Virus record (IMG/VR): IMGVR_UViG_3300035070_002626
Span: 1 to 64,000 of that record
Strand: one strand, 5' to 3'
Length of the DNA stretch: 64,000 nt
A model generated the notes under the pieces. That model worked only from the letters and a program-made list of their open reading frames with translations. It did not search any database and was not told the DNA's origin. Both the position numbers and the translations under genes were made by a program. Below, piece after piece: positions 1-45,649 of the stretch. Every line of letters starts with the position of its first letter. The first letter of the stretch is position 1.

Positions 1-267
1 GATGTACCTTGTGTTTTTGATGTTACCCACGCTGTCCAAAAGCCAGGAGGCAATGGGGAATCTAGTGGCGGTAATCGCGATTACGTTCCAGGTCTTGCTC
101 GTGCTGCCGCTGCTATGGGTGTTAGCAACTTCTTCTTAGAAGTACACCCTGATCCAGACAACGCACCTAGTGACGGACCTAATATGCTTAAACTAGAAGA
201 CTTTGAGGATGTGGTTAAACAAATCAAAGTTGTAGGTGACGCAGCAAGAGGATACACCTGGTCATGA
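1..267 (+). CDS. kdsA: KDO-8-phosphate synthase, C-terminal part (5' truncated by window edge)
   Basis: Frame 1 reads [17 protein letters not shown]...[18 protein letters not shown], the KdsA signature; its TGA overlaps the kdsB ATG (ATGA). Confidence 0.93.
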
Positions 268-11469: not shown

Positions 11470-12141
11470 CTAGGCTGTGTAGTTTTTAATGTTTGGAAAA
11501 ATATAGTTAATAACTTTTGCACAAGCATGAGCAATTTCCATATGCTCCTTTTGTGTGCCATTGGCACCACGCAAATCAATGTAATGAATCCAACTACGAA
11601 TAGTTCCGTTCATATACAGTCTTGTTTTTGTATTACCCTCGGGCAGCACTGCACGAGCTTGTTCTTTGGCAATGCCGTTTTTGATGGCCCAGTTGTAAGC
11701 TTCGCTGGCTGCATCAATTACTTTTTGCTGTTCAGTTGCCCAGGCATAGTGAATATCTTCTTCGCTGTCGACTTCTACACTGTTCTGCCTGTTCTTTGTA
11801 TCTTGCAAACGTGCTTCACGCAATACAAACATGTCTCCCATTTCTGCAGGATTAGCATAACGTTGACTGAACTCCTGGAATGAAAAACTTCTATGACGCA
11901 CAATTTGATGTGCAATATCACGTGTCGTTTCGATTTCCAAGCAAGCACTAACCATTTCAAATGGTGACCAATGCTGATGTTTAACAAGATAGTTAAGAAG
12001 ACGTTCGCTTGTTTCGTTGTTGATCTGTGCACTGGGATTTGATACCTTAGCGCAAAATGCAATCAAGTCTTGAAGGTCATCCAATCCTTCGGATACCAAG
12101 TCTTCTGTTGCCTTCGAATAGGAAATAAGTTTCACACTCAT
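11470..12141 (-). CDS. thyX: Flavin-dependent thymidylate synthase
   Basis: HWSPFE, RHRSFSFQEFSQRY ThyX motif, EQARAVLP. Confidence 0.96.
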   Translation of the reverse strand: MSVKLISYSKATEDLVSEGLDDLQDLIAFCAKVSNPSAQINNETSERLLNYLVKHQHWSPFEMVSACLEIETTRDIAHQIVRHRSFSFQEFSQRYANPAEMGDMFVLREARLQDTKNRQNSVEVDSEEDIHYAWATEQQKVIDAASEAYNWAIKNGIAKEQARAVLPEGNTKTRLYMNGTIRSWIHYIDLRGANGTQKEHMEIAHACAKVINYIFPNIKNYTA

Positions 12142-13509: not shown

Positions 13510-13686
13510 TTACCTGTCCATGTAGTAAGGTGTTTCAAATGGTTCGCCCCACTCGTACTTGTTATCAATTACCCATGAACGCTCTGCACCCAACGACACC
13601 TCCCAATCCCAATCTACCAAGATTTCGTTGCCGTTTTGCTCGGGCTGTTGATATTCGTATTCACATCCCGGAGTATCAGCCTTCAT
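13510..13686 (-). CDS. Small acidic hypothetical protein (MKADTPGC...)
   Basis: ATG overlaps the end of the VWA gene; the longer listed ORF is a shadow extension. Confidence 0.5.
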   Translation of the reverse strand: MKADTPGCEYEYQQPEQNGNEILVDWDWEVSLGAERSWVIDNKYEWGEPFETPYYMDR

Positions 13687-14923
13687 TGTATAGTGCCCAT
13701 GTTCCAAAGGGCGGGTCGGGATTAGGATCACCGTGAATAATCCAAACTGTGTCACAGTAATTAGAATCTCCCCAACTGTTCCATGGGTACCCATCTGTGA
13801 ACACCAACAAGCGTTTGGGTTCAATTTCTTCTTGTTTAAGATAGTTGAATATAGCATCAAAGTCAGTGCCGCCGCCGCCCATTAATTCATAGTCACCGAT
13901 GTCGTCTAAGTTGTCCGCAGTAAAGTCTTGTGGGTTGTAAACATTTGTGTCAAAGCAAAACAAGTGAATGTTGAAGTTACTAAACTCCTCCATAATACCT
14001 TTTACTTCGCTTAGAAAATCCATGCCCTGCTCTGCACTAATAGATCCACTCATGTCCATTGCAATTGCAACATCGATGCGCTCGTCGTAATCCATGCCCG
14101 GTAGAATAGCATCACAATCCCAACCTTTACGATTCAGTCGTGTAAATGTATAATCGCTTTTAATTGTGCTTTGCAATTGCATGCGCAACAATTCACGCCA
14201 GTCCATCTTGGGTTCTGTTAAATGCTGAACAAGTCGTTTCACACCACCTGGTATGTTTCCTGCATCTGATGTTTGTGCAGCACTCAGCATTGCTTCTTTG
14301 ATTTCTTGTTTAATCTGTTCACGTTCTTCCTTGCTGTACTGTGCTGGGCCTTTTTCATCACCGTCGCCTTCACCTTCACCGTCAAGATGTTGATCCAGCA
14401 TTTTATCTAACAAGTCTTGTAGATCAATTTTTTCTGCATTTTCGTACAAGTCATCGTATACTTCCTCTGCACTCCAGTCAGTGTACTTGGTGTCGTACAA
14501 ACACGGAACAGTGGTGATAAACTCGCCCACTCTGTGTTTTTTAAGATCAGCATTTACGCAATAATCAGCAGCAATGTTGAACAATTGCGGGTCACGCTCC
14601 CCCCGACGACCAAAATGGTCGTACACACAGTGCAATACTTCATGTCCAAACAAGAATTCAACTTCTTTGGGCTTGAGCATTTTGATAAATTTAGTGTTGT
14701 AATAAAAGTTTCTGCCGTCTGTTGCAGCGGTTGAACACCATTCGTCTGCGTTGACCAATTTTAAACGTGTAGCAAGGTTACCAAAAAAGCTGGCACGAAG
14801 CAACATGCCCACCCGGGCAGTTACTAGCAATTCACGCACTTCTCGATCTAGTTTGGGATCCATTGGGCCTAAGATGTCTTTGAACTGGTCAGATACATCT
14901 TTGTTTACTGTGGTAGTGCTCAT
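13676..14923 (-). CDS. DUF2201-type metallopeptidase + VWA domain protein (MoxR partner)
   Basis: TAATDG, HEVLH (HExxH), DMSGS MIDAS, GGGGTDF, FTDG. Confidence 0.88.
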   Translation of the reverse strand: MSTTTVNKDVSDQFKDILGPMDPKLDREVRELLVTARVGMLLRASFFGNLATRLKLVNADEWCSTAATDGRNFYYNTKFIKMLKPKEVEFLFGHEVLHCVYDHFGRRGERDPQLFNIAADYCVNADLKKHRVGEFITTVPCLYDTKYTDWSAEEVYDDLYENAEKIDLQDLLDKMLDQHLDGEGEGDGDEKGPAQYSKEEREQIKQEIKEAMLSAAQTSDAGNIPGGVKRLVQHLTEPKMDWRELLRMQLQSTIKSDYTFTRLNRKGWDCDAILPGMDYDERIDVAIAMDMSGSISAEQGMDFLSEVKGIMEEFSNFNIHLFCFDTNVYNPQDFTADNLDDIGDYELMGGGGTDFDAIFNYLKQEEIEPKRLLVFTDGYPWNSWGDSNYCDTVWIIHGDPNPDPPFGTWALYNEG

Positions 14924-19650: not shown

Positions 19651-20844
19651 TTAGAAAATTAATTTTGCAAATTCAGGAAAAGTTTTTTGAAAGTTTTCTT
19701 TGCGAATTTGATCCAACGCCCCGTTTACTTCTAGAAATTTGTCCCATTCGGCAGGATCCCTAGGTTGTTGGATAACATTAGTCAAGTCTTGGAATTCTTC
19801 GTCTTGACTGAGTTTTTCTATCACGGCTGTCTTTACCGATTCAGGCATGTTTTTAATAAACAAGTATGCCGGCTCGACCAGCAAATTCCAGTACGGTGGC
19901 AATGGCAGAATATTCATGATAGCTGCTTTAATTTCGGGTAGATAGAAAATGTTTAATACACCTACAGTGCAGATACAATCAATGTAGTATTTTACATTAT
20001 GCTCTTCAAAATATTTTTTCCAATCTGCGATATTGTTCTTAACAACTTCGTATTTTAACCCATGACGTATGTATTCAAAATGATCAGCAATACCGTCGAT
20101 GCTTACACCAATTTCAACTTCTTGGAAATGTTTAATATTTGGTATTTTGTGCACAATGTTAACACTGCCATTGGTATTGATGTATAATACAATATGAGAT
20201 GAGTGTCCAGTCTTTACTAATTGTTCAAGAAGTTTGATTACTTTTTTATTATACATAGGCTCGCCGCCGAATAATTCAAGACGCTTTAACCCAGGAGCCA
20301 TGTTGAGTATTTCTTCGAGTTGATCATCTGACCAATTTGTTGCAGCCTGATTGGTTACATAGTATTCTTTCCCGGTAAGTTTTTTTAGTTTTACGCTATC
20401 GGCTATCCAGCGATTGCTATCACCTGGATGACACACTCTACATTTAGCATTGCATATGTTTCCATTCTTGATAGTCAACACCTCTGGGCCACTGAGATAG
20501 TCACCGCTGTTAACTCGGTTAATTAATTCGTCAGCATATGTCTCGGAATCAATAAAAGAGTATTCACTTGTTGAATTAACTGGATCAAACAATCGCTGCC
20601 GCAAGCTTTTTTTATTGTTTTCTTCTTCGTGCCAGCAGCGGTTGCACACAGGGCTTTTTTTATTGTTAATAAAGTCCTGGCGCAGTTGTTCAATTTCGCT
20701 GCTACGCCATTGCTCTAGTATGCTGTTGCCTGATGCTTTCCATGTTGTGCCACCAAGATACGGGCAAGGGGAAAAGCTAGTTGACGGATGTGTAGTGCAT
20801 TGTATAAACGGGGCTACACAAAAATTCTCCGTCAACTTTTTCAT
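19651..20844 (-). CDS. Radical SAM protein with N-terminal twitch/SPASM-like Cys motif
   Basis: FCVAPF..PC..C..C N-terminus; CNAKCRVC; GGEP; TNGS; SIDG. Confidence 0.85.
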   Translation of the reverse strand: MKKLTENFCVAPFIQCTTHPSTSFSPCPYLGGTTWKASGNSILEQWRSSEIEQLRQDFINNKKSPVCNRCWHEEENNKKSLRQRLFDPVNSTSEYSFIDSETYADELINRVNSGDYLSGPEVLTIKNGNICNAKCRVCHPGDSNRWIADSVKLKKLTGKEYYVTNQAATNWSDDQLEEILNMAPGLKRLELFGGEPMYNKKVIKLLEQLVKTGHSSHIVLYINTNGSVNIVHKIPNIKHFQEVEIGVSIDGIADHFEYIRHGLKYEVVKNNIADWKKYFEEHNVKYYIDCICTVGVLNIFYLPEIKAAIMNILPLPPYWNLLVEPAYLFIKNMPESVKTAVIEKLSQDEEFQDLTNVIQQPRDPAEWDKFLEVNGALDQIRKENFQKTFPEFAKLIF

Positions 20845-20862
20845 TATATCAACCTTGTATTT

Positions 20863-20937
20863 TGGCATCCCGTAGGGGAATCGAACCCCTCTTGACGGCT
20901 TGAAAAGCCGTAGTCCTAACCGATAGACGAACGGGAC
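20863..20937 (-). tRNA. tRNA-Glu(UUC)
   Basis: Cloverleaf; anticodon arm ACGGC-TTTTCAA-GCCGT; GTTCGATTC T-loop; encoded CCA. Confidence 0.93.
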
Positions 20938-21116: not shown

Positions 21117-21204
21117 TGGCAGACAGTGTGGGATTCGAACCCACGGAACCTTTCGGTTCGGCGGATTAGTAATCCGCTGCCTTCGACCACTCGGCCAACT
21201 GTCC
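21117..21204 (-). tRNA. tRNA-Ser with unusual ACU anticodon
   Basis: Class II cloverleaf with long variable arm; GCGGA-TTACTAA-TCCGC; G73; CCA. Confidence 0.88.
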
Positions 21205-23285: not shown

Positions 23286-24104
23286 TTAGAATTTAAAGGA
23301 TAGGCTTACTTTTGGTGTTAGGTCTTCAGTGTTAAGGTCATAGTTGATGCCCGATGTTAATTCAGCACCTGCGAAACCCATTACATGCTCGCCGCCAATG
23401 TTTTGACTCATGTCATCTTCGTCACCGTTGATGTATGCTGTGAGACCATTATCAGCATTTACCGTACCCTCGTATGCCCAATGATTTGCATCATTGTCAT
23501 ATGTGAGTAGACTACCCAATTCTAGTGATCCTGCATTAATTCCGGAAAGTTCACCGCCCCATACATAGTTTTTACTTGTACGGTTATAATCTACACTTGC
23601 TGTTACGTCTGCAATACCTGCATCCATTGTGTATGCACCTTGTAGGTTGCTTACTTCTGCAATGTCTGTTGTGTAGCTGGAAAGACCAATTGCTACACTT
23701 GCTGCACCTGATGTTACCATTAGTGACTCGGTCATTGCTGGTTTTGTTAGTGTACCAGTAGCACCTGCAGCCGCTGTTGTTTCTGGCATTAGGTTGTTGT
23801 TGTCACCAAATGCTAGGTCGAGACCGTTTACTGTAGTTCCTACAGTCCATGTGTCTAATGTCAATGAATTGCCGTCTGTTGCTTTAAAGTCTAGGTCAAC
23901 AGTTGCAACATCGCCTGCATCAATGTCTAGTTCAACACCCATTGTGCCTTTGTATTTGTTGCTTCCGTTTTCAGCAAAGTCAAGATTTATTGCACCTGAC
24001 AATACTGGAGCAACCGGAGTTGCTGTGTCTTCTGCTAGTGCAGATGTAGCAATCATTGCAGCTACCGTTGCTAGTACGAATGTACGCATTTTAAATTTCC
24101 TCAT
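23286..24104 (-). CDS. Outer-membrane porin-like beta-barrel protein
   Basis: Signal peptide (ALA-E); acidic, Gly/Ala/Thr-rich alternating strands; C-terminal VSLSFKF BAM signal. Confidence 0.65.
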   Translation of the reverse strand: MRKFKMRTFVLATVAAMIATSALAEDTATPVAPVLSGAINLDFAENGSNKYKGTMGVELDIDAGDVATVDLDFKATDGNSLTLDTWTVGTTVNGLDLAFGDNNNLMPETTAAAGATGTLTKPAMTESLMVTSGAASVAIGLSSYTTDIAEVSNLQGAYTMDAGIADVTASVDYNRTSKNYVWGGELSGINAGSLELGSLLTYDNDANHWAYEGTVNADNGLTAYINGDEDDMSQNIGGEHVMGFAGAELTSGINYDLNTEDLTPKVSLSFKF

Positions 24105-24239
24105 AATTAATGATTTTCTCGTGAGCAGGATTCTCTTTTGCTCAACGTATTAATTATGTAGACCTAACCTGTAAAAATGCAAAATCCAGCGATTTTGTAA
24201 TAAGATAAAATGAGAATGTCACATTGCTGCAACACTCTC

Positions 24240-24520
24240 TTGATCGTTCTGTTGCTAGGTGATCCACCCCGGGAGCCTAACTAGGCTGCCATTGCCATTT
24301 CTGGCGCTCTATTTGCGTTTGCATTTAGAAAGTTTGTTCGCGGTAACGGCGCTTACATCCCGGTAACTCCACTCTGCTATCTCGTCAGTCGATCCTAGTT
24401 CTGCCCCATCATAATTACTCTACGCCGTAAATTTGTAGTTTTTACGCTACAAAGTAATTATGGTGGAGCAGCGCGGTACTGCCCCGCGGTCCTGTCCGTA
24501 TTCACATCACTTCAACGTTA
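24240..24520 (-). ncRNA. ssrA: Two-piece (circularly permuted) tmRNA, alphaproteobacterial type
   Basis: Acceptor piece ends ...CGCGGGGCAGTACCGCGCTGCTCCACCA at 24461; intervening spacer 24408-24460; coding piece starts GGGGCAGAACTAGGATCGAC at 24407; tag ANANRAPEMAMAA* at 24322-24281; 3' CTAGCAACAGAA. Confidence 0.92.
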
Positions 24521-24527
24521 CAATCTA

Positions 24528-24556
24528 TTTATACACTAGTATTAGTTGTTTGTCAA
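24528..24556 (-). promoter_or_regulatory. Promoter for tmRNA
   Basis: TTGACA-N17-TATAAA. Confidence 0.7.
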
Positions 24557-24703
24557 CCTATTTTTTAAAGGTTCAATTGCTGCCGTTGCTTGACTGCGAT
24601 TCCAATTAAACTTCTTCATAGCATCAGCATATAGTTGTTCGTTGTCCTTGGATGCAACAATAAGTCCACGCAAGAAGTTATCTATATCAATCCAATTGTT
24701 CAT
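24542..24703 (-). CDS. Small hypothetical protein (53 aa, MNNWIDIDNF...)
   Basis: Translated by hand; ATGA overlap with the upstream gene. Confidence 0.55.
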   Translation of the reverse strand: MNNWIDIDNFLRGLIVASKDNEQLYADAMKKFNWNRSQATAAIEPLKNRLTNN

Positions 24704-26542: not shown

Positions 26543-27037
26543 GTGAAACTATACACCCCATTCCAACTGTTTACACCCGAAGAATGTGAGCAAATTATTA
26601 AAGATACAGAAGAACTTGCTGAAAGTGATGGTATTGCCGGGGGGAAATATAATACTAGTATAAGAAATAATAAAATATTTTGGATAGATTATAAAGATAT
26701 TGAAAAGTTACGCAATCTTATGATGGATATCGAGGATTACAATATATCCTGGATACAAGAACCTATCCAAATTTCTAAATATGAAAAAGAGCAGTACTAT
26801 CACTGGCACACAGACCAATCAGTGGATAAAAGAACTAGCTCTCGAATACTTACACTAACATGCACACTTCAAACAGCGCCAGGCGCACATTTTGAAACAA
26901 GAGATCATACATTCGATCTACAGCAAGGCGAAGCAGTTATTATTCCGTCAACTGCCGAACACAGGGCGCTACCGCCAACCAGTGGCACACGCTGGGCGGT
27001 AACTGTTTGGGGTATGGGTGATAATCCTAATTTATAA
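26543..27037 (+). CDS. 2OG-Fe(II) oxygenase (prolyl-hydroxylase/PiuC-like)
   Basis: Y..WHTD (HxD), distal H-R..P...G.R....W. Confidence 0.85.
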   Translation: MKLYTPFQLFTPEECEQIIKDTEELAESDGIAGGKYNTSIRNNKIFWIDYKDIEKLRNLMMDIEDYNISWIQEPIQISKYEKEQYYHWHTDQSVDKRTSSRILTLTCTLQTAPGAHFETRDHTFDLQQGEAVIIPSTAEHRALPPTSGTRWAVTVWGMGDNPNL

Positions 27038-27733: not shown

Positions 27734-28456
27734 TTATGCCTGTTTAAAACTGTCCTCGATTAGATCTTTAATAGTGTGCAAGTTAGCACCAATATCTAAT
27801 ACCACTCTAGGCTCGTTGCTTCTGTTTAATACCCAATGGGCATATCTATAGTTATTAATCAAGTATGCATTGCGTTCAACAATTGGAAGATTTCCCCATT
27901 TATAAAAACCAAATTCATTGCCTTCACTCCATTTTAGAGGAATGTAAATTTTATTTAATGCACGGGCACCCTGGGTAGGATCAACGTGAGGGAAAAGATA
28001 TCCGCCTGGCGGCAACACATAAAAGTTAACAATGTTGATATCCTGGGGGTTTGGAAAAAGCTTCTCAACAAACTGTCTAATAGGGTGATCAACATTTAGT
28101 CGCCATTCAAATTTAAAGTCATTGCGGTGTAACATACACAGCCGGTCTTCGTCATTTGCTTTCTGTTTGTCTGCTGCAAATTTTACCCATGCATCCCAGT
28201 CTGCCGGGCCAAACAAAACTTGACCGTTCCATTCTTTGATTTGATAGTCAACCTCAATGTGTTCGTTGTCATTGGTAAACAGCCATTGCTGTCTCCAGTT
28301 GGTGCTTTGTTCTACTGCTTGGTCAAATACATTTTGATCAAACTCCGGGACATCAATGTTTAACTTGGTCCAAGGTACTCCGCTGTCTAGATAATGGTCA
28401 AGATCAAACTGGTTATTATTGCTTAGTTCTTCGATTAGTTTAGGGAATTTATGCAT
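27734..28456 (-). CDS. Asp/Asn beta-hydroxylase-like 2OG-Fe(II) cupin
   Basis: LPPGG.L.PHVD, IYIPL, H.V.N.S..PR. Confidence 0.7.
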   Translation of the reverse strand: MHKFPKLIEELSNNNQFDLDHYLDSGVPWTKLNIDVPEFDQNVFDQAVEQSTNWRQQWLFTNDNEHIEVDYQIKEWNGQVLFGPADWDAWVKFAADKQKANDEDRLCMLHRNDFKFEWRLNVDHPIRQFVEKLFPNPQDINIVNFYVLPPGGYLFPHVDPTQGARALNKIYIPLKWSEGNEFGFYKWGNLPIVERNAYLINNYRYAHWVLNRSNEPRVVLDIGANLHTIKDLIEDSFKQA

Positions 28457-31223: not shown

Positions 31224-31940
31224 TTATACTGTATCTACTTGTTCGGTTAAAATTCTAAAAGTGTCGTTCCAGTCAGCAACTTTGTATGATTTGCCTCTGT
31301 TTTGTTCAGCTATTGCATCTGCTAAAGGGGCGTCATTGCCGCCGGGGAAAATCGCATCACCAAAAAAATGTAGTTCGTCAGTGTCGGCAAAATCAACTAA
31401 TATCTGACTTTTGTTATTGCCTTTTGGTGCAATATCTAATCCTGTTTCCCCACCTGATGTAGCAAGTAACTCTGGAAACATTAAGTTAAATGATTTAACA
31501 ATCCTAGCACGTTCACGTTGTGCTTTATCCCATGTAACGTATAATGCACGTTCGGTTAAACTAGCGTTACGACCTACTACACTAAAGTTTACCATACCAG
31601 ATCGTTCTTCGATGTGATTGCCAGTGCGTACTGGAAATTTACTTTCGTACTCACAACTGTCTAAGAAATACCTGGCAAGATCGGGTAACCTCCAATTACT
31701 AGTACGAACATTTTTATCGCCTTGCCACACATCACTACCAGAACATTGGTAAACACGCTGACATTTGTGGTAAATGTACTCGCCAATTTGTTCGACAGTT
31801 TTAGGTTTGTCGCTCCCAGTGACAAGATACACAAGATTGTTTTCACAAAACTTGCTAAACCACACAGCAAATTGTTTGTCCATGTGCTGCCTGCTATCAG
31901 TAAGTGTACCGTCTACATCAAATATGTACTTTTTTGCCAT
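31224..31940 (-). CDS. HAD-IIB phosphomannomutase-like enzyme (PMM family)
   Basis: FDVDGTLT, VTGSD, IE.R.GMVNFS..GR, GG...DI, FFGD...GGND. Confidence 0.85.
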   Translation of the reverse strand: MAKKYIFDVDGTLTDSRQHMDKQFAVWFSKFCENNLVYLVTGSDKPKTVEQIGEYIYHKCQRVYQCSGSDVWQGDKNVRTSNWRLPDLARYFLDSCEYESKFPVRTGNHIEERSGMVNFSVVGRNASLTERALYVTWDKAQRERARIVKSFNLMFPELLATSGGETGLDIAPKGNNKSQILVDFADTDELHFFGDAIFPGGNDAPLADAIAEQNRGKSYKVADWNDTFRILTEQVDTV

Positions 31941-33444
31941 CTTCTTTCCTGATTACATAATTGTTAATTATTAATACATCAAGACCGCATTTCTTAAATG
32001 TGGCAACTGCATCCTCGGGTGTTTCTACAATAGGCTCCTGGCAGTTGAAGCTGGTGTTGAGCAACATAGGAACGCCTGTTAGGGTATAGAATGCATTTAT
32101 TAAGTCGTAGTAGCAAGAATTAAACTCGCGCTGTACAGTCTGTATACGTGCTGTGCCGTCTACATGTGTTACACCAGGAATAGTATTACTTGTAACTGGC
32201 ATGATACGGCTCATGTACGGACTAGGCTGGTTGGTATCAAAATAATCTTGATAATGTTCATACAATACACTTGGCGCAAATGGTCTGAAGTCTTCACGCA
32301 GTTTAATTTTACTGTTGATAATATCTTTAATATCTGGCTTGCGTGGATCTGCAAGTATACTCCGATTGCCTAACGCTCTGTGCCCGCTTTCGCTAGCACC
32401 CTGATACCATCCAACTATTGCACCATCGGCAATAGCAGCGGCAACTTCAGTGTATACTTCTTCCATTGATTTTTGTTGATAGTACAATCCGTTGAATATA
32501 GCAGTGTCTACAATGTAGTCTTCTCCTGCATACACTGTAGGAATATGTGTGTTACCATTTAAAATGTAATCAGCATGCATGTAAACGCCTAATGCCTGGC
32601 CTTCGTCACCAGGAGCCGGCGGCACATGTACATTTGTGTAATGCTTTGTAAACTCTTCATTCATATAACCGTTGTATGCAACTCCGCCTGCAATGCATAA
32701 ATTGTCTGATGTTTTAAGAGGATATACGTGTTTTGTAACAAGTTCAAATGTAACTTGTTGTAGCGTAAATGCTACATCCTCTTTAGCAACACGCTGTATA
32801 ATATCATGTGCACCGTCAGGGAGTCGTTGATTGGGATTTTCTAAATAACGATGAATCATTGTGTAAACTTCATCGTTATATTTTCCAAATCCTACCAAGC
32901 CCATAACCTTGCCGGCTTGGAGGAATTCAAATCCAAGATTCTGTGCTAATGTGTTCCAACACCCGCCAATTGACAGTTCCTTGGTCAAGTCAGTGATTGT
33001 ACCGTGTTTATTAATAAAGATACAATTAAAATTATAACCCTTGTCGTCAATCGCTAGTACATCACTTTCTTTAAAGCCTGAATTTAGAAATGCATAAGCA
33101 GCATGACTTTGGTGATGGTCGATATAGTAATAACTATCTGTGTGTAATCTATCCCATAGATTGTTTGGCTTAAACTTTAAAAAATCTGTGTCCGGTAAGG
33201 TCTCTTCTACTAAGTCTTCAACATATTCATGTCCTAAATTAGAAATAGTAAATGCAAATACTTGCTCTTTATTATAGTTAGGCAAGAAATGGTCGTCGAA
33301 AAAATCCCTACAGGGCACAGGGTCACGCAAGAAATCCGGATTAAGATTATGCTTTACTCTGGTGTGCCGTTCTATTTGGTTATGAACCAGACCGTTGTAT
33401 GTATTGTGATCGTGGTGATTTACTGCTATAGAAAATATTTTCAT
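31918..33444 (-). CDS. Carbamoyltransferase, NodU/CmcH family (copy 2)
   Basis: HHQSHA, AGKVMGL, GGVAYN, RALGNRSILADP, REDFRPFAP, HVDGTAR, LNTSFN. Confidence 0.9.
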   Translation of the reverse strand: MKIFSIAVNHHDHNTYNGLVHNQIERHTRVKHNLNPDFLRDPVPCRDFFDDHFLPNYNKEQVFAFTISNLGHEYVEDLVEETLPDTDFLKFKPNNLWDRLHTDSYYYIDHHQSHAAYAFLNSGFKESDVLAIDDKGYNFNCIFINKHGTITDLTKELSIGGCWNTLAQNLGFEFLQAGKVMGLVGFGKYNDEVYTMIHRYLENPNQRLPDGAHDIIQRVAKEDVAFTLQQVTFELVTKHVYPLKTSDNLCIAGGVAYNGYMNEEFTKHYTNVHVPPAPGDEGQALGVYMHADYILNGNTHIPTVYAGEDYIVDTAIFNGLYYQQKSMEEVYTEVAAAIADGAIVGWYQGASESGHRALGNRSILADPRKPDIKDIINSKIKLREDFRPFAPSVLYEHYQDYFDTNQPSPYMSRIMPVTSNTIPGVTHVDGTARIQTVQREFNSCYYDLINAFYTLTGVPMLLNTSFNCQEPIVETPEDAVATFKKCGLDVLIINNYVIRKEDGKKVHI

Positions 33445-33487
33445 CAGACTCTCTGTTTTGTTAAACATATAATAACACTGATAGTTG

Positions 33488-34081
33488 CTATACGTCAACC
33501 ATTCTTTTTAAATCGTGAATAGTAAAATCACTATCTTTGGCGATAGTCACTATTTCGCCCATTCGTTCAAACACTTCTTCGCCATCTGCGGTCTCTGTTT
33601 GATTAACATGTGCCTGAGCTTCATCTAACCAAAACGTGGTAAAATAATCAATATCGCTATTGTCTGTAAAATTAAACTTGTATATACCATTGAATCCAAA
33701 ATAAAGGTTGTTAATAATGAACTCAGGCGGGGTTTCATTTTTTTCGTGGTAGTCACTAACAATATTCTCAGGCCAGTTAACATAAAACGGCATTGTGTGC
33801 AGCACTGTGTGCAGTATTGAATTATTATCTATTGTTATATCTAGTAGTTCAACGCTTAAATCAGCTACAATATTATTACTATCGTCAACAATGGTATCGT
33901 CGTTGGTTTTGTTATAGTGTTCAATGGACAATACATTTTGCAACAATGGTTGAATGTTTAACGTGTGTTCATTAATCTCAGAAATTTCAGTATCAACATA
34001 TACTGTATCGTTAACAGATAGTCTCACCTTAGGTGATTTTCCATTGGCACAGTTGCCACGGAGCTTAATCTTTATTTCCAT
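33488..34081 (-). CDS. Hypothetical beta-rich protein (paralog family)
   Basis: SPKVRLSVND...HYNKT..DT...VEL.DITID...LYFGFNG.Y.F.F. Confidence 0.6.
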   Translation of the reverse strand: MEIKIKLRGNCANGKSPKVRLSVNDTVYVDTEISEINEHTLNIQPLLQNVLSIEHYNKTNDDTIVDDSNNIVADLSVELLDITIDNNSILHTVLHTMPFYVNWPENIVSDYHEKNETPPEFIINNLYFGFNGIYKFNFTDNSDIDYFTTFWLDEAQAHVNQTETADGEEVFERMGEIVTIAKDSDFTIHDLKRMVDV

Positions 34082-34099: not shown

Positions 34100-35653
34100 T
34101 TAAAAATTTTGCTTTGAATGTGCCCATGGTTCAATGATATCAGCTGATAAACTGTTCTGTTCTCGATCAAACTTTACATTGTTAATCATAGTTCCAGTAT
34201 TATCTGTTAGTAGCTGAACTTCGTTCCAGCTACTCAGCAATTGCTTTGTATAGTTTGCTGCTTCGAAAACTGGATACCCCAATTCTTCAACATGTGATTG
34301 TAGGATAATCCTTCTCTTCAATCGTTCCTTGTATGTTAATGTCGGATTATCAACACAAACCCAATCATTAACATGATCATTGTCCTGCACTAGGTTATAT
34401 TTTTCTCTATCATCATATAATGGAGTGCGTTTTAATAGATTCAGTGTAAGTCCTAAATTTACTTCTTCGATTGTGCCGTTATCTAGATATGGCTTGTATC
34501 GAGTAAACATCTCTTTTGTTAAATCAAAATCTTCTATGGTCTCTGTAGGATACCCTACAATCATTAACATACGTACTTTGATCCCTACTCTATCTAGTTG
34601 GGAAATGCTGTAGTTAAGATCTTCTTCGCTATATCCCTTTTTCATGTGTTCTCTCACTGCCGGAGAACCGCTTTCGATTCCAACTAACATTGTACCTGCA
34701 CCAGCTGCCTTCATGACATCAAAGTCTTCGGGTGGCATCTGTTTTGGCCCACGTACAATAAAATGGGTGTCCCATATAAACTTTTTTTCTTCTGGTAGTG
34801 TTTTTCTGTATTCAGCTAACTCTAGAGTCATTTCCCTAAATGCTTTCATACTACCATTAATTAGACTATCTGTAAATCTAAATGCAGTTGCACCATATGC
34901 TTCAACTTGTTGACGCATTTCGTCAGCAATATTTTTGCCACTGCGATAGTAAAACTTTGGCCACATACTTGCAACATCACAAAATGTGCATTTTCTTACA
35001 CATCCTCTACTGCCAGTAATCGGCAATGCTTCCAACCCTTTGGAATTAGTGTAGGTTTTTAGTTCGTAGTCGTCATAATTGGGAAAAGCTAAACTATCAA
35101 CATCTACGATTTGCTGAGGAGGCTTGCCATTAATTCCAGGATAATCAATGTTTCCTTTAAGTAACTCGACTAATGCAAGTTCTCCTTCGCCCCGTATATA
35201 TGCGTCAATGATACGATTTTCGTGCAGAGACTCTGCAAATTTAAAATCTGTAGCAATTCCGCCGCCTCCGATTACAATTTTAATAGCAGGGTTGAGCTTT
35301 TTAATTGCAACAGATAGTAAGCGAGTTGCTCGTTGACTATTATAACTAAACACACTCATACCAACCCATGTTGGATTTTGATTAACAATTTTTTCGGCCC
35401 ACGATTCGATAACAGGAGCTAATAATTTCCATGTTTTATTATTATAGAATGTGTGATAAAAAAAGAAGTTGTCAATGGCGTTATGTAGTTCGTGATTATG
35501 AAACTGCTGATCAATTTCGGCATTAAGGTCAAAGATAATACTACTAAATCCGTGTGCAGATAAACTTCCCTTTAGCAATGCTGCTCCTGCTGGAGTATAC
35601 CCAAAATCGTCAACGATTCTCGGCGGTATTACTAACACAATATCTTTATTCAT
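34100..35653 (-). CDS. B12-binding radical SAM enzyme (class B methylase-like)
   Basis: N-terminal cobalamin-binding fold (GMSVF, IVIGG, GEGE); SRGCVRKCTFC; GIESGS; IVGYPTET. Confidence 0.88.
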   Translation of the reverse strand: MNKDIVLVIPPRIVDDFGYTPAGAALLKGSLSAHGFSSIIFDLNAEIDQQFHNHELHNAIDNFFFYHTFYNNKTWKLLAPVIESWAEKIVNQNPTWVGMSVFSYNSQRATRLLSVAIKKLNPAIKIVIGGGGIATDFKFAESLHENRIIDAYIRGEGELALVELLKGNIDYPGINGKPPQQIVDVDSLAFPNYDDYELKTYTNSKGLEALPITGSRGCVRKCTFCDVASMWPKFYYRSGKNIADEMRQQVEAYGATAFRFTDSLINGSMKAFREMTLELAEYRKTLPEEKKFIWDTHFIVRGPKQMPPEDFDVMKAAGAGTMLVGIESGSPAVREHMKKGYSEEDLNYSISQLDRVGIKVRMLMIVGYPTETIEDFDLTKEMFTRYKPYLDNGTIEEVNLGLTLNLLKRTPLYDDREKYNLVQDNDHVNDWVCVDNPTLTYKERLKRRIILQSHVEELGYPVFEAANYTKQLLSSWNEVQLLTDNTGTMINNVKFDREQNSLSADIIEPWAHSKQNF

Positions 35654-35687
35654 ATTTCTATTTACCGCTAATCGCATATTTGTGTTA

Positions 35688-35763
35688 TGGTGCCCCAAGA
35701 GAGACTCGAACTCCCGACCTACTGATTACAAATCAGTTGCTCTACCAGCTGAGCTATTGGGGC
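35688..35763 (-). tRNA. tRNA-Thr(UGU)
   Basis: ACTGA-TTTGTAA-TCAGT; CCA. Confidence 0.95.
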
Positions 35764-43730: not shown

Positions 43731-44556
43731 ATTTCCAAGTTCCTAAAAATCCTTGAGGGTCGTTTTCTCTCATGCGTGTCCAGACGTCATACCCGCCTTT
43801 ACGTGCACCATCTAAATATCCATTGTCTTGACCAAGTCGTTTGCGGAACCATTCCATTTTGTAACCCCATAGAATCCTTGTTTGCGCAGTCGGGGGATAA
43901 AGAAAATCCTTGGGGTTAGACATGTCGCCTTCGAGTCGTTCTGGCTGTCGCTCTGCATATGTTTCGTCGTCGTTGTTGCCAGTTAAGTCAGCTCTGTCGT
44001 GGATGCACTCGCTTTTGAGTTGAATCATTGCATCACATATATATGCTACTTGACTAATCCATCCGTCGGTAATAACATGCGGAGATACACAGCCAAAAAG
44101 TATCAACCAATCTCGGGGAATAACCGGAAAGATAGCATATGGATGACCGTGATTATCTGAGAATCTTTGTACTGCAAATTGCCCTGAATGGCTGAGAATT
44201 TCAGTGTCCCATCCCTTGCTCACCATTATAGCATCATCATTCCAAACACACAGCCATTCGCCTTTACTATGCTGGGCTAATATATTAGTGTATTCGTTTA
44301 GTCGATGATATCCCATGCGAGGTTGTGTAAACACATACAGATCTAAATCTGCTTCTTCAAAATATGGAATCATGTCACTTTCAACATAGTCAATAGTTTT
44401 TTGATCATCGTCATCAATTGCAATCATGAATTCAATATCATGCGGGTTATCAGCAGTATCAATCATGCTCTGCATACTGCTCAATGCTTGTACTGGTCTC
44501 CCGCGAGTTGGGAACATTACAGATATTTTCTTACTTGGATTAATTTGAAATGTCAT
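43720..44556 (-). CDS. GT2-like (GT-A) glycosyltransferase
   Basis: ISVMFPTRGR, IDDDD, WNDD (DxD-like). Confidence 0.75.
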   Translation of the reverse strand: MTFQINPSKKISVMFPTRGRPVQALSSMQSMIDTADNPHDIEFMIAIDDDDQKTIDYVESDMIPYFEEADLDLYVFTQPRMGYHRLNEYTNILAQHSKGEWLCVWNDDAIMVSKGWDTEILSHSGQFAVQRFSDNHGHPYAIFPVIPRDWLILFGCVSPHVITDGWISQVAYICDAMIQLKSECIHDRADLTGNNDDETYAERQPERLEGDMSNPKDFLYPPTAQTRILWGYKMEWFRKRLGQDNGYLDGARKGGYDVWTRMRENDPQGFLGTWKYEQ

Positions 44557-45173
44557 TATCGTTTCTCTATAATTTTATCAGCCAAGCCCCATTCAACTGC
44601 TTCTGCCGCAGTAAGGAATGTATCAAACTTCATAGTCTCTGACATTTCGTCATATGTCTTGCCGGCTGTGTTGTGCTTAACGTAAAGCTCTGTAAGGCGT
44701 CGATTTACTTTTTTGCTCTCTTCCATGCTGCGTACTGCATCTTCAAACTGTAGCTCTTGGACATACACACTACCGCTTGTTCCACGTGTACCTGAGCTCA
44801 CACGGTGAATCATTGTTCGTGATTCTGGCAATACAATACGCTTGCCTGCTGCACCTGCTTGTGCAAGGAATGAGCCCATGCTGCATGCTTGTCCGATAAC
44901 TACTGTGGATACATCGCACTTGATAAATTGCATGGTATCGTAAATACCAAGTCCTGCACTTACCTGCCCTCCTGGGCTGTTAATATAAAGCAAGATGTCC
45001 TTGTCTGGGTCTTCGCTTTCTAAAAACAACAGTTGTGCAATAATTGCATTAGCCATATTGTCCTCAACTGGACCATTCAGCATGATAATACGATCTTTCA
45101 GTAATCGACTGTAAATGTCGTATGCACGTTCGCCTTTTGAAGTAGTTTCAACTACCATTGGAATTAAGGACAT
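44556..45173 (-). CDS. clpP: ATP-dependent Clp protease proteolytic subunit
   Basis: [24 protein letters not shown] (Ser), MIH (His). Confidence 0.95.
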
Positions 45174-45649
45174 TATTCAGAAAACCTTTCTTTGCGTACA
45201 ATAAATGGTGTGTAAATTGCGCTGTTAGCACCGTGCTCCATGCACTCTGCAGATTCGCACCAACAACGATTGTCTGTTGCTTCTCTAATAAGTTTATCAG
45301 CAAACTTCCATGCGTGTTCTGCAAACTTTTCTGCACCCACTCCGTCTAGTACTGTAACTTCTGCTAGACCCATGTTTTCAAGTTCTGCAAACTTGTACAA
45401 GAACGGATCTTCTCTATCAATTACTGTCTTATGATCAAATGTATCTTCTAGCCATGCTTTAAGAGGTTTAAGTCCTCCAAAGTCAACGGCCCAGTTTTTA
45501 TTGTCTAGCTCGCTACATCCAAATGTAAACTTGAAACCCAAACTATATCCGTGTAAGAATTTACAATGTGAATGGTCTGCATGTGGTTGACGGAACACCG
45601 CTGAAAGTCCGATGTTGTGTCCGTAAGTTTTTGTTGAATAATGTGGCAT
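45173..45649 (-). CDS. queD: 6-carboxy-tetrahydropterin synthase
   Basis: [22 protein letters not shown]-terminal E...N.A. Confidence 0.9.

What the first reader, a model, noticed from the sequence alone, without database searches (positions are those of the whole stretch)
24240..24520. Phage-borne permuted tmRNA identifies the host lineage
Seen: acceptor piece, spacer and coding piece in permuted order; GGCAGUA T-loop; tag ANANRAPEMAMAA. The spacer ends pair (AUAAUUAC/GUAAUUAU). Established: two-piece tmRNA with this T-loop is typical of alphaproteobacteria, and ANDNRAP... tags are typical of Rhodobacteraceae. The D-to-A change at tag position 3 could alter adaptor recognition (inference).
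Basis: partly seen in the sequence, partly recalled or inferred. Interest (0 to 1): 0.6.

Follow-up and report, generated by a model that had tools for sequence, protein, structure and literature searches.

The report
Phage-lineage two-piece tmRNA gene
A marine jumbo phage carries an intact, alphaproteobacterial-style two-piece tmRNA (ribosome-rescue RNA), but its tag and sequence belong to a large virus-only family shared among many marine phages, so it marks a phage lineage and does not pinpoint the host family.

Summary
A permuted tmRNA gene spans about 24556 to 24212 and passes both Rfam models (104.6 and 101.3 bits). The T-loop GGCAGUA, G3:U70, encoded CCA, tag ANANRAPEMAMAA and pairing spacer ends are all present. 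The window is the first 64 kb of a 299,910-bp marine jumbo myophage.

ANDNRAP tags are indeed Rhodobacterales-specific among the bacteria scanned. This tmRNA, however, is not a host copy. The same tag occurs on four other viral contigs, and ...PEMA(L/M/I)AA tags occur on at least 120 viral contigs but on 0 of 401 sampled alphaproteobacterial genomes. A tree puts it with viral tmRNAs, outside all sampled bacteria; grouping it with Rhodobacterales is rejected (AU p = 0.003). Close viral relatives read ANDNYAP instead. The published phage Melnitz carries an alpha-type tmRNA yet infects a gammaproteobacterium. Ala at tag position 3 is recurrent in this viral family (19 of 27 viral versus 0 of 56 bacterial ANxNRAP tags).

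Strong covariation across 56 family members supports function. The phage lacks SmpB and SspB but encodes ClpP, ClpX, ClpA and ClpS. Phage two-piece tmRNAs are already known, so this is a new member of a known kind. The host is probably a marine alphaproteobacterium, family unresolved.

The parts
24528..24556 (-). Promoter-like site: TTGACA (24556..24551), 17-nt spacer, TATAAA(TA) (24533..24528). It also fits the T4-type late motif TATAAATA.
   Evidence: Read directly from the sequence. The consensus scan did not list it because it requires T at position 6 of the second hexamer. Its function has not been tested.
24461..24521 (-). Acceptor piece: 5' strand of helix P2, T-arm CGCGG-GGCAGUA-CCGCG, 3' acceptor strand CUGCUCC, then ACCA (CCA encoded, ending at 24461).
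   Evidence: Rfam alignments. Pattern unique in the window, 0 of 100 shuffles. T-stem and acceptor stem covary in 56 relatives.
24408..24460 (-). Intervening spacer (53 nt), removed on maturation. Its ends form a helix that continues the acceptor stem, and it has an internal hairpin.
   Evidence: Spacer-end helix: 8 of 10 pairs show compensatory changes across the family, 94% of cells paired. The MFE fold shows the continuous stem. The same spacer occurs in L279, L280, L336, L343 and L346.
24238..24407 (-). Coding piece: 5' acceptor strand GGGGCAG (G3:U70), D-loop analogue AGGAUCGAC, 3' strands of P2, pseudoknot PK1 (24362..24340), tag frame, stop-codon hairpin (24286..24275), 3' pseudoknot (about 24270..24242).
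   Evidence: Rfam. Covariation in P2, PK1 and the stop hairpin. The 3' pseudoknot stem exists in more than 25 complementary versions among relatives; here it is only GAUC/GAUC.
24281..24322 (-). Tag reading frame: resume codon GCA, 13 codons plus UAG, giving ANANRAPEMAMAA. It contains the hairpin GCCA-GAAA-UGGC.
   Evidence: Read directly. Identical tag on L322, L332, L344 and L353. Synonymous codon changes within the family keep A-(L/M/I)-A-A.
24203..24239 (-). Intrinsic-terminator-like hairpin (12 pairs) followed by a T-rich tail, directly after the coding piece.
   Evidence: 4 terminator-like sites found against 0.5 expected in shuffles; MFE fold.
23286..24104 (-). g31, a 272-aa protein that appears from its sequence to have an N-terminal signal peptide. 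It is the conserved downstream neighbour of the tmRNA in many related viral contigs. No family assigned.
   Evidence: No Pfam or PHROG hit. Syntenic at 64-71% nucleotide identity in L372, L322, L353, L281, L292, L338 and others. No match in cultured phages.
44556..45173 (-). Phage ClpP, a candidate protease for tagged proteins. Its partners lie outside the window at genome coordinates: ClpA 71480-73765, ClpS 143555-143896, ClpX 146941-148152.
   Evidence: PF00574 at 220 bits. NF001368 at 260.8 bits, above its cutoff of 249. Ser, His and Asp motifs present. ClpA: and IGF loop. ClpX at 532.7 bits, above its cutoff of 359. ClpS. The link to the tmRNA is inference.

Best explanation
This is an intact phage-encoded two-piece tmRNA (ssrA). 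It belongs to a large, virus-specific branch of alphaproteobacterial-type tmRNAs that is shared and reshuffled among marine phages. Shown: a promoter-like site and a terminator bracket a precursor of about 310 nt. All defining tmRNA elements are present and are maintained by compensatory evolution in relatives. Inferred from established tmRNA biology: the precursor folds so that the spacer ends extend the acceptor stem. Host RNase P and a 3' nuclease remove the spacer, leaving an acceptor piece ending in CCA and a coding piece. Host AlaRS charges it through G3:U70. With host SmpB (the phage has none) it enters stalled ribosomes during infection, frees them, and appends (A)ANANRAPEMAMAA to the unfinished protein. 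The hydrophobic C-terminus then sends that protein to Clp proteases, either the host's or the phage's own ClpXP and ClpAP, keeping ribosomes and amino acids available for phage production. As a host marker it supports, weakly, an alphaproteobacterial host in the sea. It does not resolve the family.
For: Identity: both Rfam models are above gathering score. The bit scores are like those of cultured phage tmRNAs (Phosso 108/113; MD18 and DSS3_MAL1 110-119). Function: in 56 family members, 96.3% of pair cells are paired against 81.3% in shuffles and 35-47% in slid controls. There are 330 double-sided changes against 101 expected, and G3:U70 is kept in 56 of 56. The fold z-score is -4.4. Own terminator. 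Viral lineage: identical or near-identical tags on many IMG/VR contigs; tmRNA 72-86% identical over about 320 nt with the neighbour g31 in synteny; 114 of 120 such contigs share genes with this phage. The PEMA tag pattern is in 0 of 401 alpha genomes, and blastn of the whole RNA finds only 5 weak acceptor-piece hits in 401. Tree and AU tests. Phage context. Host hint: the nearest cultured phages by DNA polymerase and portal are Sinorhizobium phage Phosso and Agrobacterium phage Atu_ph07 at 46-52%, and Phosso also carries an alpha-type tmRNA. Marine origin: 12 studies. No SmpB, SspB or ArfB. ClpP, ClpA, ClpS and ClpX are present. Prior art: PMC9004378.
Against: There are no expression, processing or charging data; only DNA runs were found. 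ARAGORN rejects this copy. Its 3' pseudoknot stem is only 4 bp and part of P2 has mismatches, so this particular copy could be weaker than its relatives. The bacterial sample in the tree lacks named SAR11, Caulobacterales, Rhodospirillales and Rickettsiales, and low versus high GC could help separate viral from bacterial rows. The Clp link is not specific: Atu_ph07 and PA5oct have ClpP, ClpX and ClpA without a tmRNA, while MD18, DSS3_MAL1, Melnitz and Lacusarx have a tmRNA without Clp. The portal of Pseudomonas phage PA5oct is nearly as close (49%), so phage taxonomy does not fix the host class.
Confidence: 0.8

Rival explanations
1. One reading: the tmRNA is a copy of the host's gene, so its ANxNRAP tag identifies a Rhodobacteraceae host, with D3A as a private change.
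For: In bacteria ANDNRAP tags were found only in Rhodobacterales. Some of these end in AMAA (ANDNRAPVAMAA in Donghicola and Tateyamaria) or have 13 residues (ANDNRAPAMALAA in Nioella). Cultured roseophages MD18 and DSS3_MAL1 carry tags ending in ...APMEMAIAA, so ...EMA.AA tags do occur in phages of Rhodobacterales. A clade of all viral tmRNAs plus Rhodobacterales is not rejected (p = 0.34).
Against: The closest tags are viral, not bacterial. Sister RNAs read ANDNYAP and other variants. The body is least similar to Rhodobacterales (70-83% against up to 92% for viral, rough). AU tests reject this phage plus its sisters with Rhodobacterales (p = 0.003). True Rhodobacterales tmRNAs score 290-300 bits on RF01849 against 101 here, and have a post-stop region about 45 nt longer. 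The phage is 40% GC. Phage tags differ from host tags in every cultured case examined. Melnitz is a counter-example (PMC9004378).
Confidence: 0.12
2. Specialised tag: the viral tag (Ala, Val or Thr in place of the invariant Asp; PEMA core; M or I before the final AA) has been reshaped. Phage-tagged proteins would then escape the host SspB adaptor and be handled by the phage's own ClpAP or ClpXP, or be read at a different rate.
For: Asp3 is present in 56 of 56 bacterial ANxNRAP tags but in only 8 of 27 viral ones (Fisher p = 9e-13). In E. coli, SspB binds the first seven tag residues and blocks ClpAP (PMC9963277). This phage encodes ClpA with an IGF loop, ClpS, ClpX and ClpP, but no SspB.
Against: Nothing here measures binding. 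Every ANAN tag in the aligned family uses the same codons, AAC-GCA-AAU, so the change may have a single origin spread by recombination rather than repeated selection. The Clp kit and the tmRNA occur independently in other phages. The PEMA core may be constrained at the RNA level by the GCCA-GARA-UGGC hairpin rather than as a peptide. The determinants read by alphaproteobacterial SspB could not be read from the library.
Confidence: 0.2
3. The host is not an alphaproteobacterium: the alpha-type tmRNA is a legacy of the phage lineage, as in Melnitz, which infects OM43.
For: The Melnitz precedent (PMC9004378). tmRNA bodies and tags are mosaic across phages. Core genes are almost as close to Pseudomonas phage PA5oct as to the alphaproteobacterial phages.
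Against: The two nearest cultured relatives by both polymerase and portal infect Rhizobiales, and one of them carries an alpha-type tmRNA. All other cultured carriers of alpha-type tmRNA seen here infect Alphaproteobacteria (MD18, DSS3_MAL1, Lacusarx, Phosso).
Confidence: 0.2
4. Non-functional remnant: an att-site fragment or a decaying pseudogene picked up from a host tmRNA locus.
For: tmRNA genes are common integration sites. ARAGORN does not accept this copy, and its last pseudoknot stem is short.
Against: The gene is complete, with both pieces, an open tag frame, a promoter-like site and a terminator. It is maintained by compensatory change across the family. No tyrosine integrase is found in the 300-kb record.
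Confidence: 0.04

Closest known systems
Two-piece ssrA of Methylophilales phage Melnitz and related pelagimyophages (Buchholz et al. 2022, PMC9004378)
   Same: Marine myophage; permuted alpha-type tmRNA; sits behind a promoter; no phage SmpB; carried by part of a phage group as a lineage trait.
   Different: Melnitz's tag is ANDNYVPVDYALAA and its RNA falls in a different viral clade. Melnitz has a glutamine riboswitch at the 3' end; none is found in this window. Melnitz is 141 kb and has no Clp genes.
ssrA of roseophages Phaeobacter phage MD18 and Ruegeria phage DSS3_MAL1
   Same: Alpha-type two-piece tmRNA at 110-119 bits; lies within a tRNA cluster; the tag ends in ...EMAIAA and lacks Asp at position 3 (ANTNAAPMEMAIAA).
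   Different: Only weak nucleotide similarity, confined to the T-arm. A 98-nt spacer. A GOLLD RNA lies next to it. The phages are about 149 kb with no Clp genes. They group with the Lacusarx and Phosso tmRNAs.
Unannotated tmRNA of Sinorhizobium phage Phosso (PV764938, 349553-350242)
   Same: Phosso is the nearest cultured relative of this phage (DNA polymerase and portal, 52%). It has a permuted alpha-type tmRNA with the same shortened post-stop region, and it also carries ClpP, ClpX and ClpA but no SmpB.
   Different: A spacer of about 410 nt; tag ANDNVSTKVALAA; soil phage of 469 kb; the RNA is in another viral clade.
Chromosomal two-piece tmRNA of Alphaproteobacteria (Caulobacter model; Rfam RF01849)
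   Same: Gene order acceptor piece, spacer, coding piece; T-loop GGCNGUA; G3:U70; AN.N tag start and xAA end; PK1 and a 3' pseudoknot.
   Different: Bacterial copies score 230-310 bits against 101 here. They have about 45 nt more after the stop codon. Asp3 is invariant in the 59 distinct bacterial tags read here. They form a separate clade.

Membership tests
Two-piece (permuted) tmRNA, Rfam RF04321 / RF01849 | Covariance-model score above the curated gathering score | tested here: met
   104.6 bits against 47, and 101.3 bits against 50; confirmed on the whole genome.
Two-piece (permuted) tmRNA, Rfam RF04321 / RF01849 | Permuted gene order: acceptor piece with encoded CCA, then spacer, then coding piece starting with the 5' acceptor strand | tested here: met
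   24521..24461, 24460..24408 and 24407..24238.
Two-piece (permuted) tmRNA, Rfam RF04321 / RF01849 | tRNA-Ala-like acceptor stem with G3:U70 | tested here: met
   GGGGCAG/CUGCUCC; the U:G pair is kept in 56 of 56 relatives while neighbouring pairs covary.
Two-piece (permuted) tmRNA, Rfam RF04321 / RF01849 | Short open tag frame starting at an Ala resume codon and ending in a hydrophobic xAA degron | tested here: met
   GCA...UAG, giving ANANRAPEMAMAA. Synonymous variation in relatives preserves A-(L/M/I)-A-A.
Two-piece (permuted) tmRNA, Rfam RF04321 / RF01849 | Helices P2, PK1 and the 3' pseudoknot maintained by compensatory change | tested here: met
   In this copy the 3' pseudoknot stem is short (4 bp) and mid-P2 is imperfect.
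Two-piece (permuted) tmRNA, Rfam RF04321 / RF01849 | Works with SmpB, is charged with Ala, and tags proteins (trans-translation) | not testable with these tools
   No SmpB in the phage, so a host SmpB would be needed. No RNA or proteome data.
Rhodobacterales chromosomal tmRNA (a host-copy reading) | Tag ANDNRAP(V/M/A)(A/M)(L/V/M)AA | tested here: not met
   The best bacterial match is 10 of 13 residues (ANDNRAPAMALAA; ANDNRAPVAMAA with a gap). Asp3 is present in 56 of 56 bacterial tags but is Ala here.
Rhodobacterales chromosomal tmRNA (a host-copy reading) | RNA body clusters with Rhodobacterales tmRNAs | tested here: not met
   It falls outside the bacterial clade (99/94 support). AU p = 0.003 for this phage plus two sisters with Rhodobacterales. 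Caveats: short alignment, GC bias, limited bacterial sampling.
Viral 'PEMA' tmRNA family (defined here) | Tag AN(D/A/V)Nxx-PEMA-(L/M/I)AA, compact post-stop region, found on low-GC viral contigs | tested here: met
   Identical tag on 4 contigs. At least 120 contigs carry the pattern. 72-86% nucleotide identity. Median contig GC 37.6%.

The most novel reading that the evidence does not exclude
A virus-only family of tmRNAs has rewritten the degradation tag. It has lost the otherwise invariant Asp in the adaptor-binding half, fixed a PEMA core, and placed M or I before the final AA. In jumbo phages that also bring ClpX, ClpA, ClpS and ClpP, this would form a phage-controlled 'tag and destroy' circuit that bypasses the host SspB adaptor and re-routes rescued nascent chains to phage proteases.
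Probability: 0.15. Interest if true: 0.7.

Novelty: new member of a known kind. Interest (0 to 1): 0.4.

Why it matters
Phage-encoded two-piece tmRNAs are already documented in marine phages, so the gene itself is not new. Three things have practical value.

1. A phage tmRNA should not be used as a family-level host marker. Here tags and RNA bodies are exchanged among phages and sit outside the bacterial clade.
2. A large viral tag family (...PEMA(L/M/I)AA, often without the conserved Asp) was not found in 401 sampled alphaproteobacterial genomes. Its tag strings also returned no relevant paper in the searched literature.
3. tmRNA co-occurs with a full ClpXP/ClpAPS kit in one phage genome. This gives a direct test of whether phages control the fate of rescued proteins.

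ARAGORN misses this copy and Phosso's, so surveys based on it undercount such genes.

Tried and rejected
- **ARAGORN:** run through the tool and locally with relaxed thresholds; it does not call the gene.
- **First viral scan:** it used a mistyped pattern with one N too many, so its zero result is meaningless. Corrected and validated.
- **blastn against cultured phages:** the tmRNA gave nothing at E of 1e-5 and only short weak hits at E of 10.
- **blastn against 401 alphaproteobacterial genomes:** five weak hits, all on the acceptor piece.
- **Neighbours of the tmRNA:** Pfam and PHROGs left g31, g33 and g34 without a function. g31 has no cultured-phage homologue.
- **First AU test:** 'this phage alone plus Rhodobacterales' was unfair because it tore the phage from its sisters. 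It was replaced by fairer groupings.
- **A dedicated tmRNA-Clp module:** co-occurrence in cultured phages does not support a strict link.
- **Lessner et al. 2007** on alphaproteobacterial SspB is not held in the library, so statements on adaptor determinants rest on E. coli data (PMC9963277).
- **Metagenome contigs:** these give presence and breakpoints only. No RNA run was available, so expression is untested.
- **Not used:** protein searches of the large databases, structure prediction and complex prediction were not needed.

Full report
**What is there**

The finding lies on the minus strand. Rfam's tmRNA_permuted model matches 24521..24281 at 104.6 bits (gathering score 47). The alpha_tmRNA model matches 24573..24238 at 101.3 bits (gathering score 50). 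The sequence itself shows the following parts:
- an acceptor piece (24521..24461) with T-arm CGCGG-GGCAGUA-CCGCG and an encoded CCA;
- a 53-nt spacer (24460..24408) whose ends AUAAUUAC/GUAAUUAU are complementary;
- a coding piece from G24407, with acceptor stem GGGGCAG/CUGCUCC carrying G3:U70;
- the tag frame at 24322..24281, which reads ANANRAPEMAMAA.

TTGACA, a 17-nt spacer and TATAAA(TA) lie just upstream (24556..24528). A 12-bp hairpin with a T-run lies just downstream (24239..24212). The predicted transcript of about 310 nt folds with a z-score of -4.4 and reproduces the T-arm, the acceptor stem continued by the spacer-end helix, and the terminator. ARAGORN does not call this copy, although it of 56 relatives.

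**Context**

The window is the first 64 kb of a 299,910-bp IMG/VR virus record. It is linear, estimated 86% complete and 40.0% GC. It encodes nine tRNAs; the seven in the window share the tmRNA's strand.

The record encodes a tail sheath, portal, baseplate and fibre proteins, DNA polymerase B and ribonucleotide reductase. No integrase was found. Near-identical sequence occurs in marine, seawater and estuary metagenomes from 12 studies.

By DNA polymerase and portal, the nearest cultured phages are Sinorhizobium phage Phosso (52%) and Agrobacterium phage Atu_ph07 (46-52%). The Pseudomonas PA5oct group is close behind at 49%.

**Is the RNA functional?**

I aligned this gene with 55 distinct relatives from viral contigs (alignment A1). 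For 40 base pairs in eight helices:

| Measure | Observed | Control |
|---|---|---|
| Cells paired | 96.3% | 81.3% in shuffles; 35-47% when partners are slid |
| Double-sided changes | 330 | about 101 expected |

The acceptor stem, T-stem, outer and inner P2, PK1 and the stop-codon hairpin all covary, and G3:U70 is invariant. The helix formed by the spacer ends shows compensatory change at 8 of 10 pairs. The last pseudoknot stem exists in more than 25 complementary versions; in this copy it is only GAUC/GAUC. Synonymous changes in the tag codons preserve A-(L/M/I)-A-A.

**Does it identify the host?**

A capped scan of one genome per bacterial species for the ANxNRAP coding pattern returned 56 tmRNAs, all reading ANDNRAP.... 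The named ones are Rhodobacterales, apart from two oddly labelled records.

The phage RNA, however, is not a Rhodobacterales copy. Five lines of evidence point the same way:
- **Score and length.** True alpha tmRNAs score 230-310 bits on RF01849, against 101 here. They are about 45 nt longer after the stop codon.
- **Sequence similarity.** blastn of the phage RNA against 401 genomes sampled across the class gave only five weak hits, all on the acceptor piece.
- **Tags.** At least 120 IMG/VR contigs carry alpha-type acceptor pieces, and at least 120 carry tags of the form ANxNxxPEMA.... That tag pattern was found in 0 of 401 sampled alphaproteobacterial genomes. The exact tag ANANRAPEMAMAA is on four other contigs. 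Close variants are common: ANANRAPEMAIAA ×9, ANANRAPEMALAA ×6, ANDNRAPEMALAA ×8, ANDNYAPEMAMAA ×19 and ANDNYAPEMALAA ×31.
- **Shared genes.** These contigs are 34-42% GC. Their tmRNA is 72-86% identical to this one over about 320 nt. Many keep the downstream gene g31 in synteny, and 114 of 120 share genes with this phage. For the identical-tag contigs the shared genes reach 88-94% protein identity, though in a different gene order.
- **Variable tag residues.** Within this family residues 5-6 vary (YA, RA, YQ, HQ, YS, KA and others). Contigs with the same 53-nt spacer as this phage read ANDNYAP... or ANANYEP.... 'RAP' is therefore one variant among many, not a lineage signature.

A tree of acceptor piece plus pre-tag region (79 rows, tag excluded) puts all 18 bacterial rows in one clade (support 99/94) and all phage rows outside it. 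This phage groups with two viral contigs (99/99). MD18, DSS3_MAL1, Lacusarx and Phosso group with each other rather than with their hosts' orders. The AU tests gave:

| Grouping forced into one clade with Rhodobacterales | p (AU) | Result |
|---|---|---|
| This phage plus its two sisters | 0.003 | rejected |
| All viral rows | 0.34 | not rejected |
| MD18 and DSS3_MAL1 | 0.25 | not rejected |

A recent capture is therefore excluded, but the deep origin remains open. Caveats: the alignment is short, GC content differs between viral and bacterial rows, and SAR11, Caulobacterales and Rhodospirillales could not be sampled by name.

**What is already known**

Buchholz et al. 2022 (PMC9004378) found 53 two-piece tmRNAs among 18,146 phage genomes, 50 of them aquatic. 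They showed that Melnitz, a phage of the gammaproteobacterial OM43 clade, carries an alpha-type tmRNA.

Tags read here from cultured phages all differ from the tags of their hosts' orders:

| Phage | Tag |
|---|---|
| Melnitz | ANDNYVPVDYALAA |
| MD18 and DSS3_MAL1 | ANTNAAPMEMAIAA |
| Lacusarx | ANDNDVVTAEVRLAA |
| Phosso | ANDNVSTKVALAA |

The common viral 'ANDNFA...YALAA' type matches Melnitz ssrA. The PEMA type has no cultured counterpart. Its tag strings returned no relevant paper in the searched literature.

**The D-to-A change**

Asp at tag position 3 is present in 56 of 56 bacterial ANxNRAP tags but in only 8 of 27 viral ANxNRAPEMA tags; the other 19 have Ala (Fisher p = 9e-13). Over all PEMA tags the counts are D 85, A 32 and V 3.

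All ANAN tags in the aligned family use the same codons, AAC-GCA-AAU. This suggests a single origin spread by recombination. In E. coli, SspB binds the first seven tag residues and thereby blocks ClpAP (PMC9963277). Whether the alphaproteobacterial adaptor reads this Asp could not be checked here.

**Clp context**

The phage has no SmpB, SspB or ArfB, so it must rely on the host's SmpB. It does encode:
- ClpP, with an intact catalytic triad;
- a ClpA-type unfoldase with an IGF docking loop;
- ClpS;
- a bona fide ClpX, 533 bits against a cutoff of 359;
- an IbpA-like small heat-shock protein.

A phage-run 'tag and degrade' circuit is therefore possible. The link is not obligatory, though. Phosso has both tmRNA and Clp. 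Atu_ph07 and PA5oct have Clp without a tmRNA. MD18, DSS3_MAL1, Melnitz and Lacusarx have a tmRNA without Clp. None of the seven has SmpB.

**Metagenomes**

Assemblies break inside the tmRNA. Many short contigs pile up on 24272-24539 and run off into different flanks. This fits a segment shared by several co-occurring phage genomes. These are contigs, so depth and expression cannot be inferred from them.

**Verdict**

The RNA is an intact phage two-piece tmRNA of the alpha type and a member of a large virus-only family. It gives a weak pointer to an alphaproteobacterial marine host. It does not identify Rhodobacteraceae. It is a new member of a known kind and of moderate interest. The most interesting open point is whether the rewritten viral tag changes adaptor and protease routing.

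Noticed in passing
L148:1501-2190 (PV764938.1 349553-350242, minus strand): Sinorhizobium phage Phosso has a permuted alpha-type tmRNA (108 and 113 bits, tag ANDNVSTKVALAA). It lies in a gap between annotated CDSs and is not annotated in GenBank. Its two pieces are separated by an unusually long spacer of about 410 nt, whose content was not examined. ARAGORN misses it.
   Followed up: partly
L388:1893-2356 and L389:1736-2203: A GOLLD RNA (RF02032, 160-170 bits) lies directly upstream of the tmRNA, within a tRNA cluster, in roseophages DSS3_MAL1 and MD18.
   Followed up: no
window 24408-24460; also L279, L280, L336, L343, L346 (alignment A1): The same 53-nt spacer occurs in tmRNA genes whose bodies and tags differ (for example ANANYEPEMALAA and ANDNYAPEMAMAA). 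The spacer, the body and the tag appear to be exchanged as separate modules.
   Followed up: partly
window 24298-24309 (minus strand; within the tag frame): A hairpin GCCA-GAAA-UGGC (GNRA loop) spans the codons xxG-CCA-GAA-AUG-GCx. In 56 of 56 relatives Pro is CCA, and the preceding codon ends in G although it varies (GCG, CAG, UCG, AAG, GAG). The 'PEMA' core may therefore be constrained as RNA as well as peptide. The sample was selected by the PEMA pattern, so this needs an unbiased set.
   Followed up: partly
window 44556-45173; genome 71480-73765, 143555-143896, 143938-144381, 146941-148152: The phage encodes a full proteostasis kit: ClpP, ClpA (with an IGF loop), ClpS, an IbpA-like small heat-shock protein and ClpX. 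The ClpP/ClpX/ClpA set is shared with Phosso, Atu_ph07 and PA5oct.
   Followed up: partly
window 21117-21204 (minus strand): ARAGORN calls a tRNA-Ser with anticodon ACU, which is unusual (A at position 34). Rfam confirms a tRNA at this place (56.5 bits).
   Followed up: no
window 1-260, 920-2458, 11470-12141, 13676-14923, 19651-20868, 26543-27037, 27734-28456, 31918-33498, 34100-35698, 45173-45649: A dense set of auxiliary enzymes: two carbamoyltransferases, ThyX, a DUF2201 metallopeptidase/VWA protein, two radical-SAM enzymes (one B12-binding), two 2OG-Fe(II) oxygenase-type proteins and a QueD/PTPS-like protein. The window starts inside a frame that looks like KdsA; that is my reading of the translation and was not searched.
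   Followed up: no
window 24272-24539 in runs X1, X2, X3, X7: Metagenome assemblies fragment at the tmRNA. Many short contigs cover it and continue into unrelated flanks, as expected for a sequence shared by several phage populations in one sample.
   Followed up: partly
genome 273839-287359 (outside the window): A single open frame of 4,506 codons on the plus strand near the end of the record. It was not analysed.
   Followed up: no
L039 and L102: Records labelled Nocardioides marinus and Luminiphilus sp. (a small MAG contig) carry Rhodobacterales-type tmRNAs (ANDNRAPVALAA). These are probably contamination or mis-binning.
   Followed up: no
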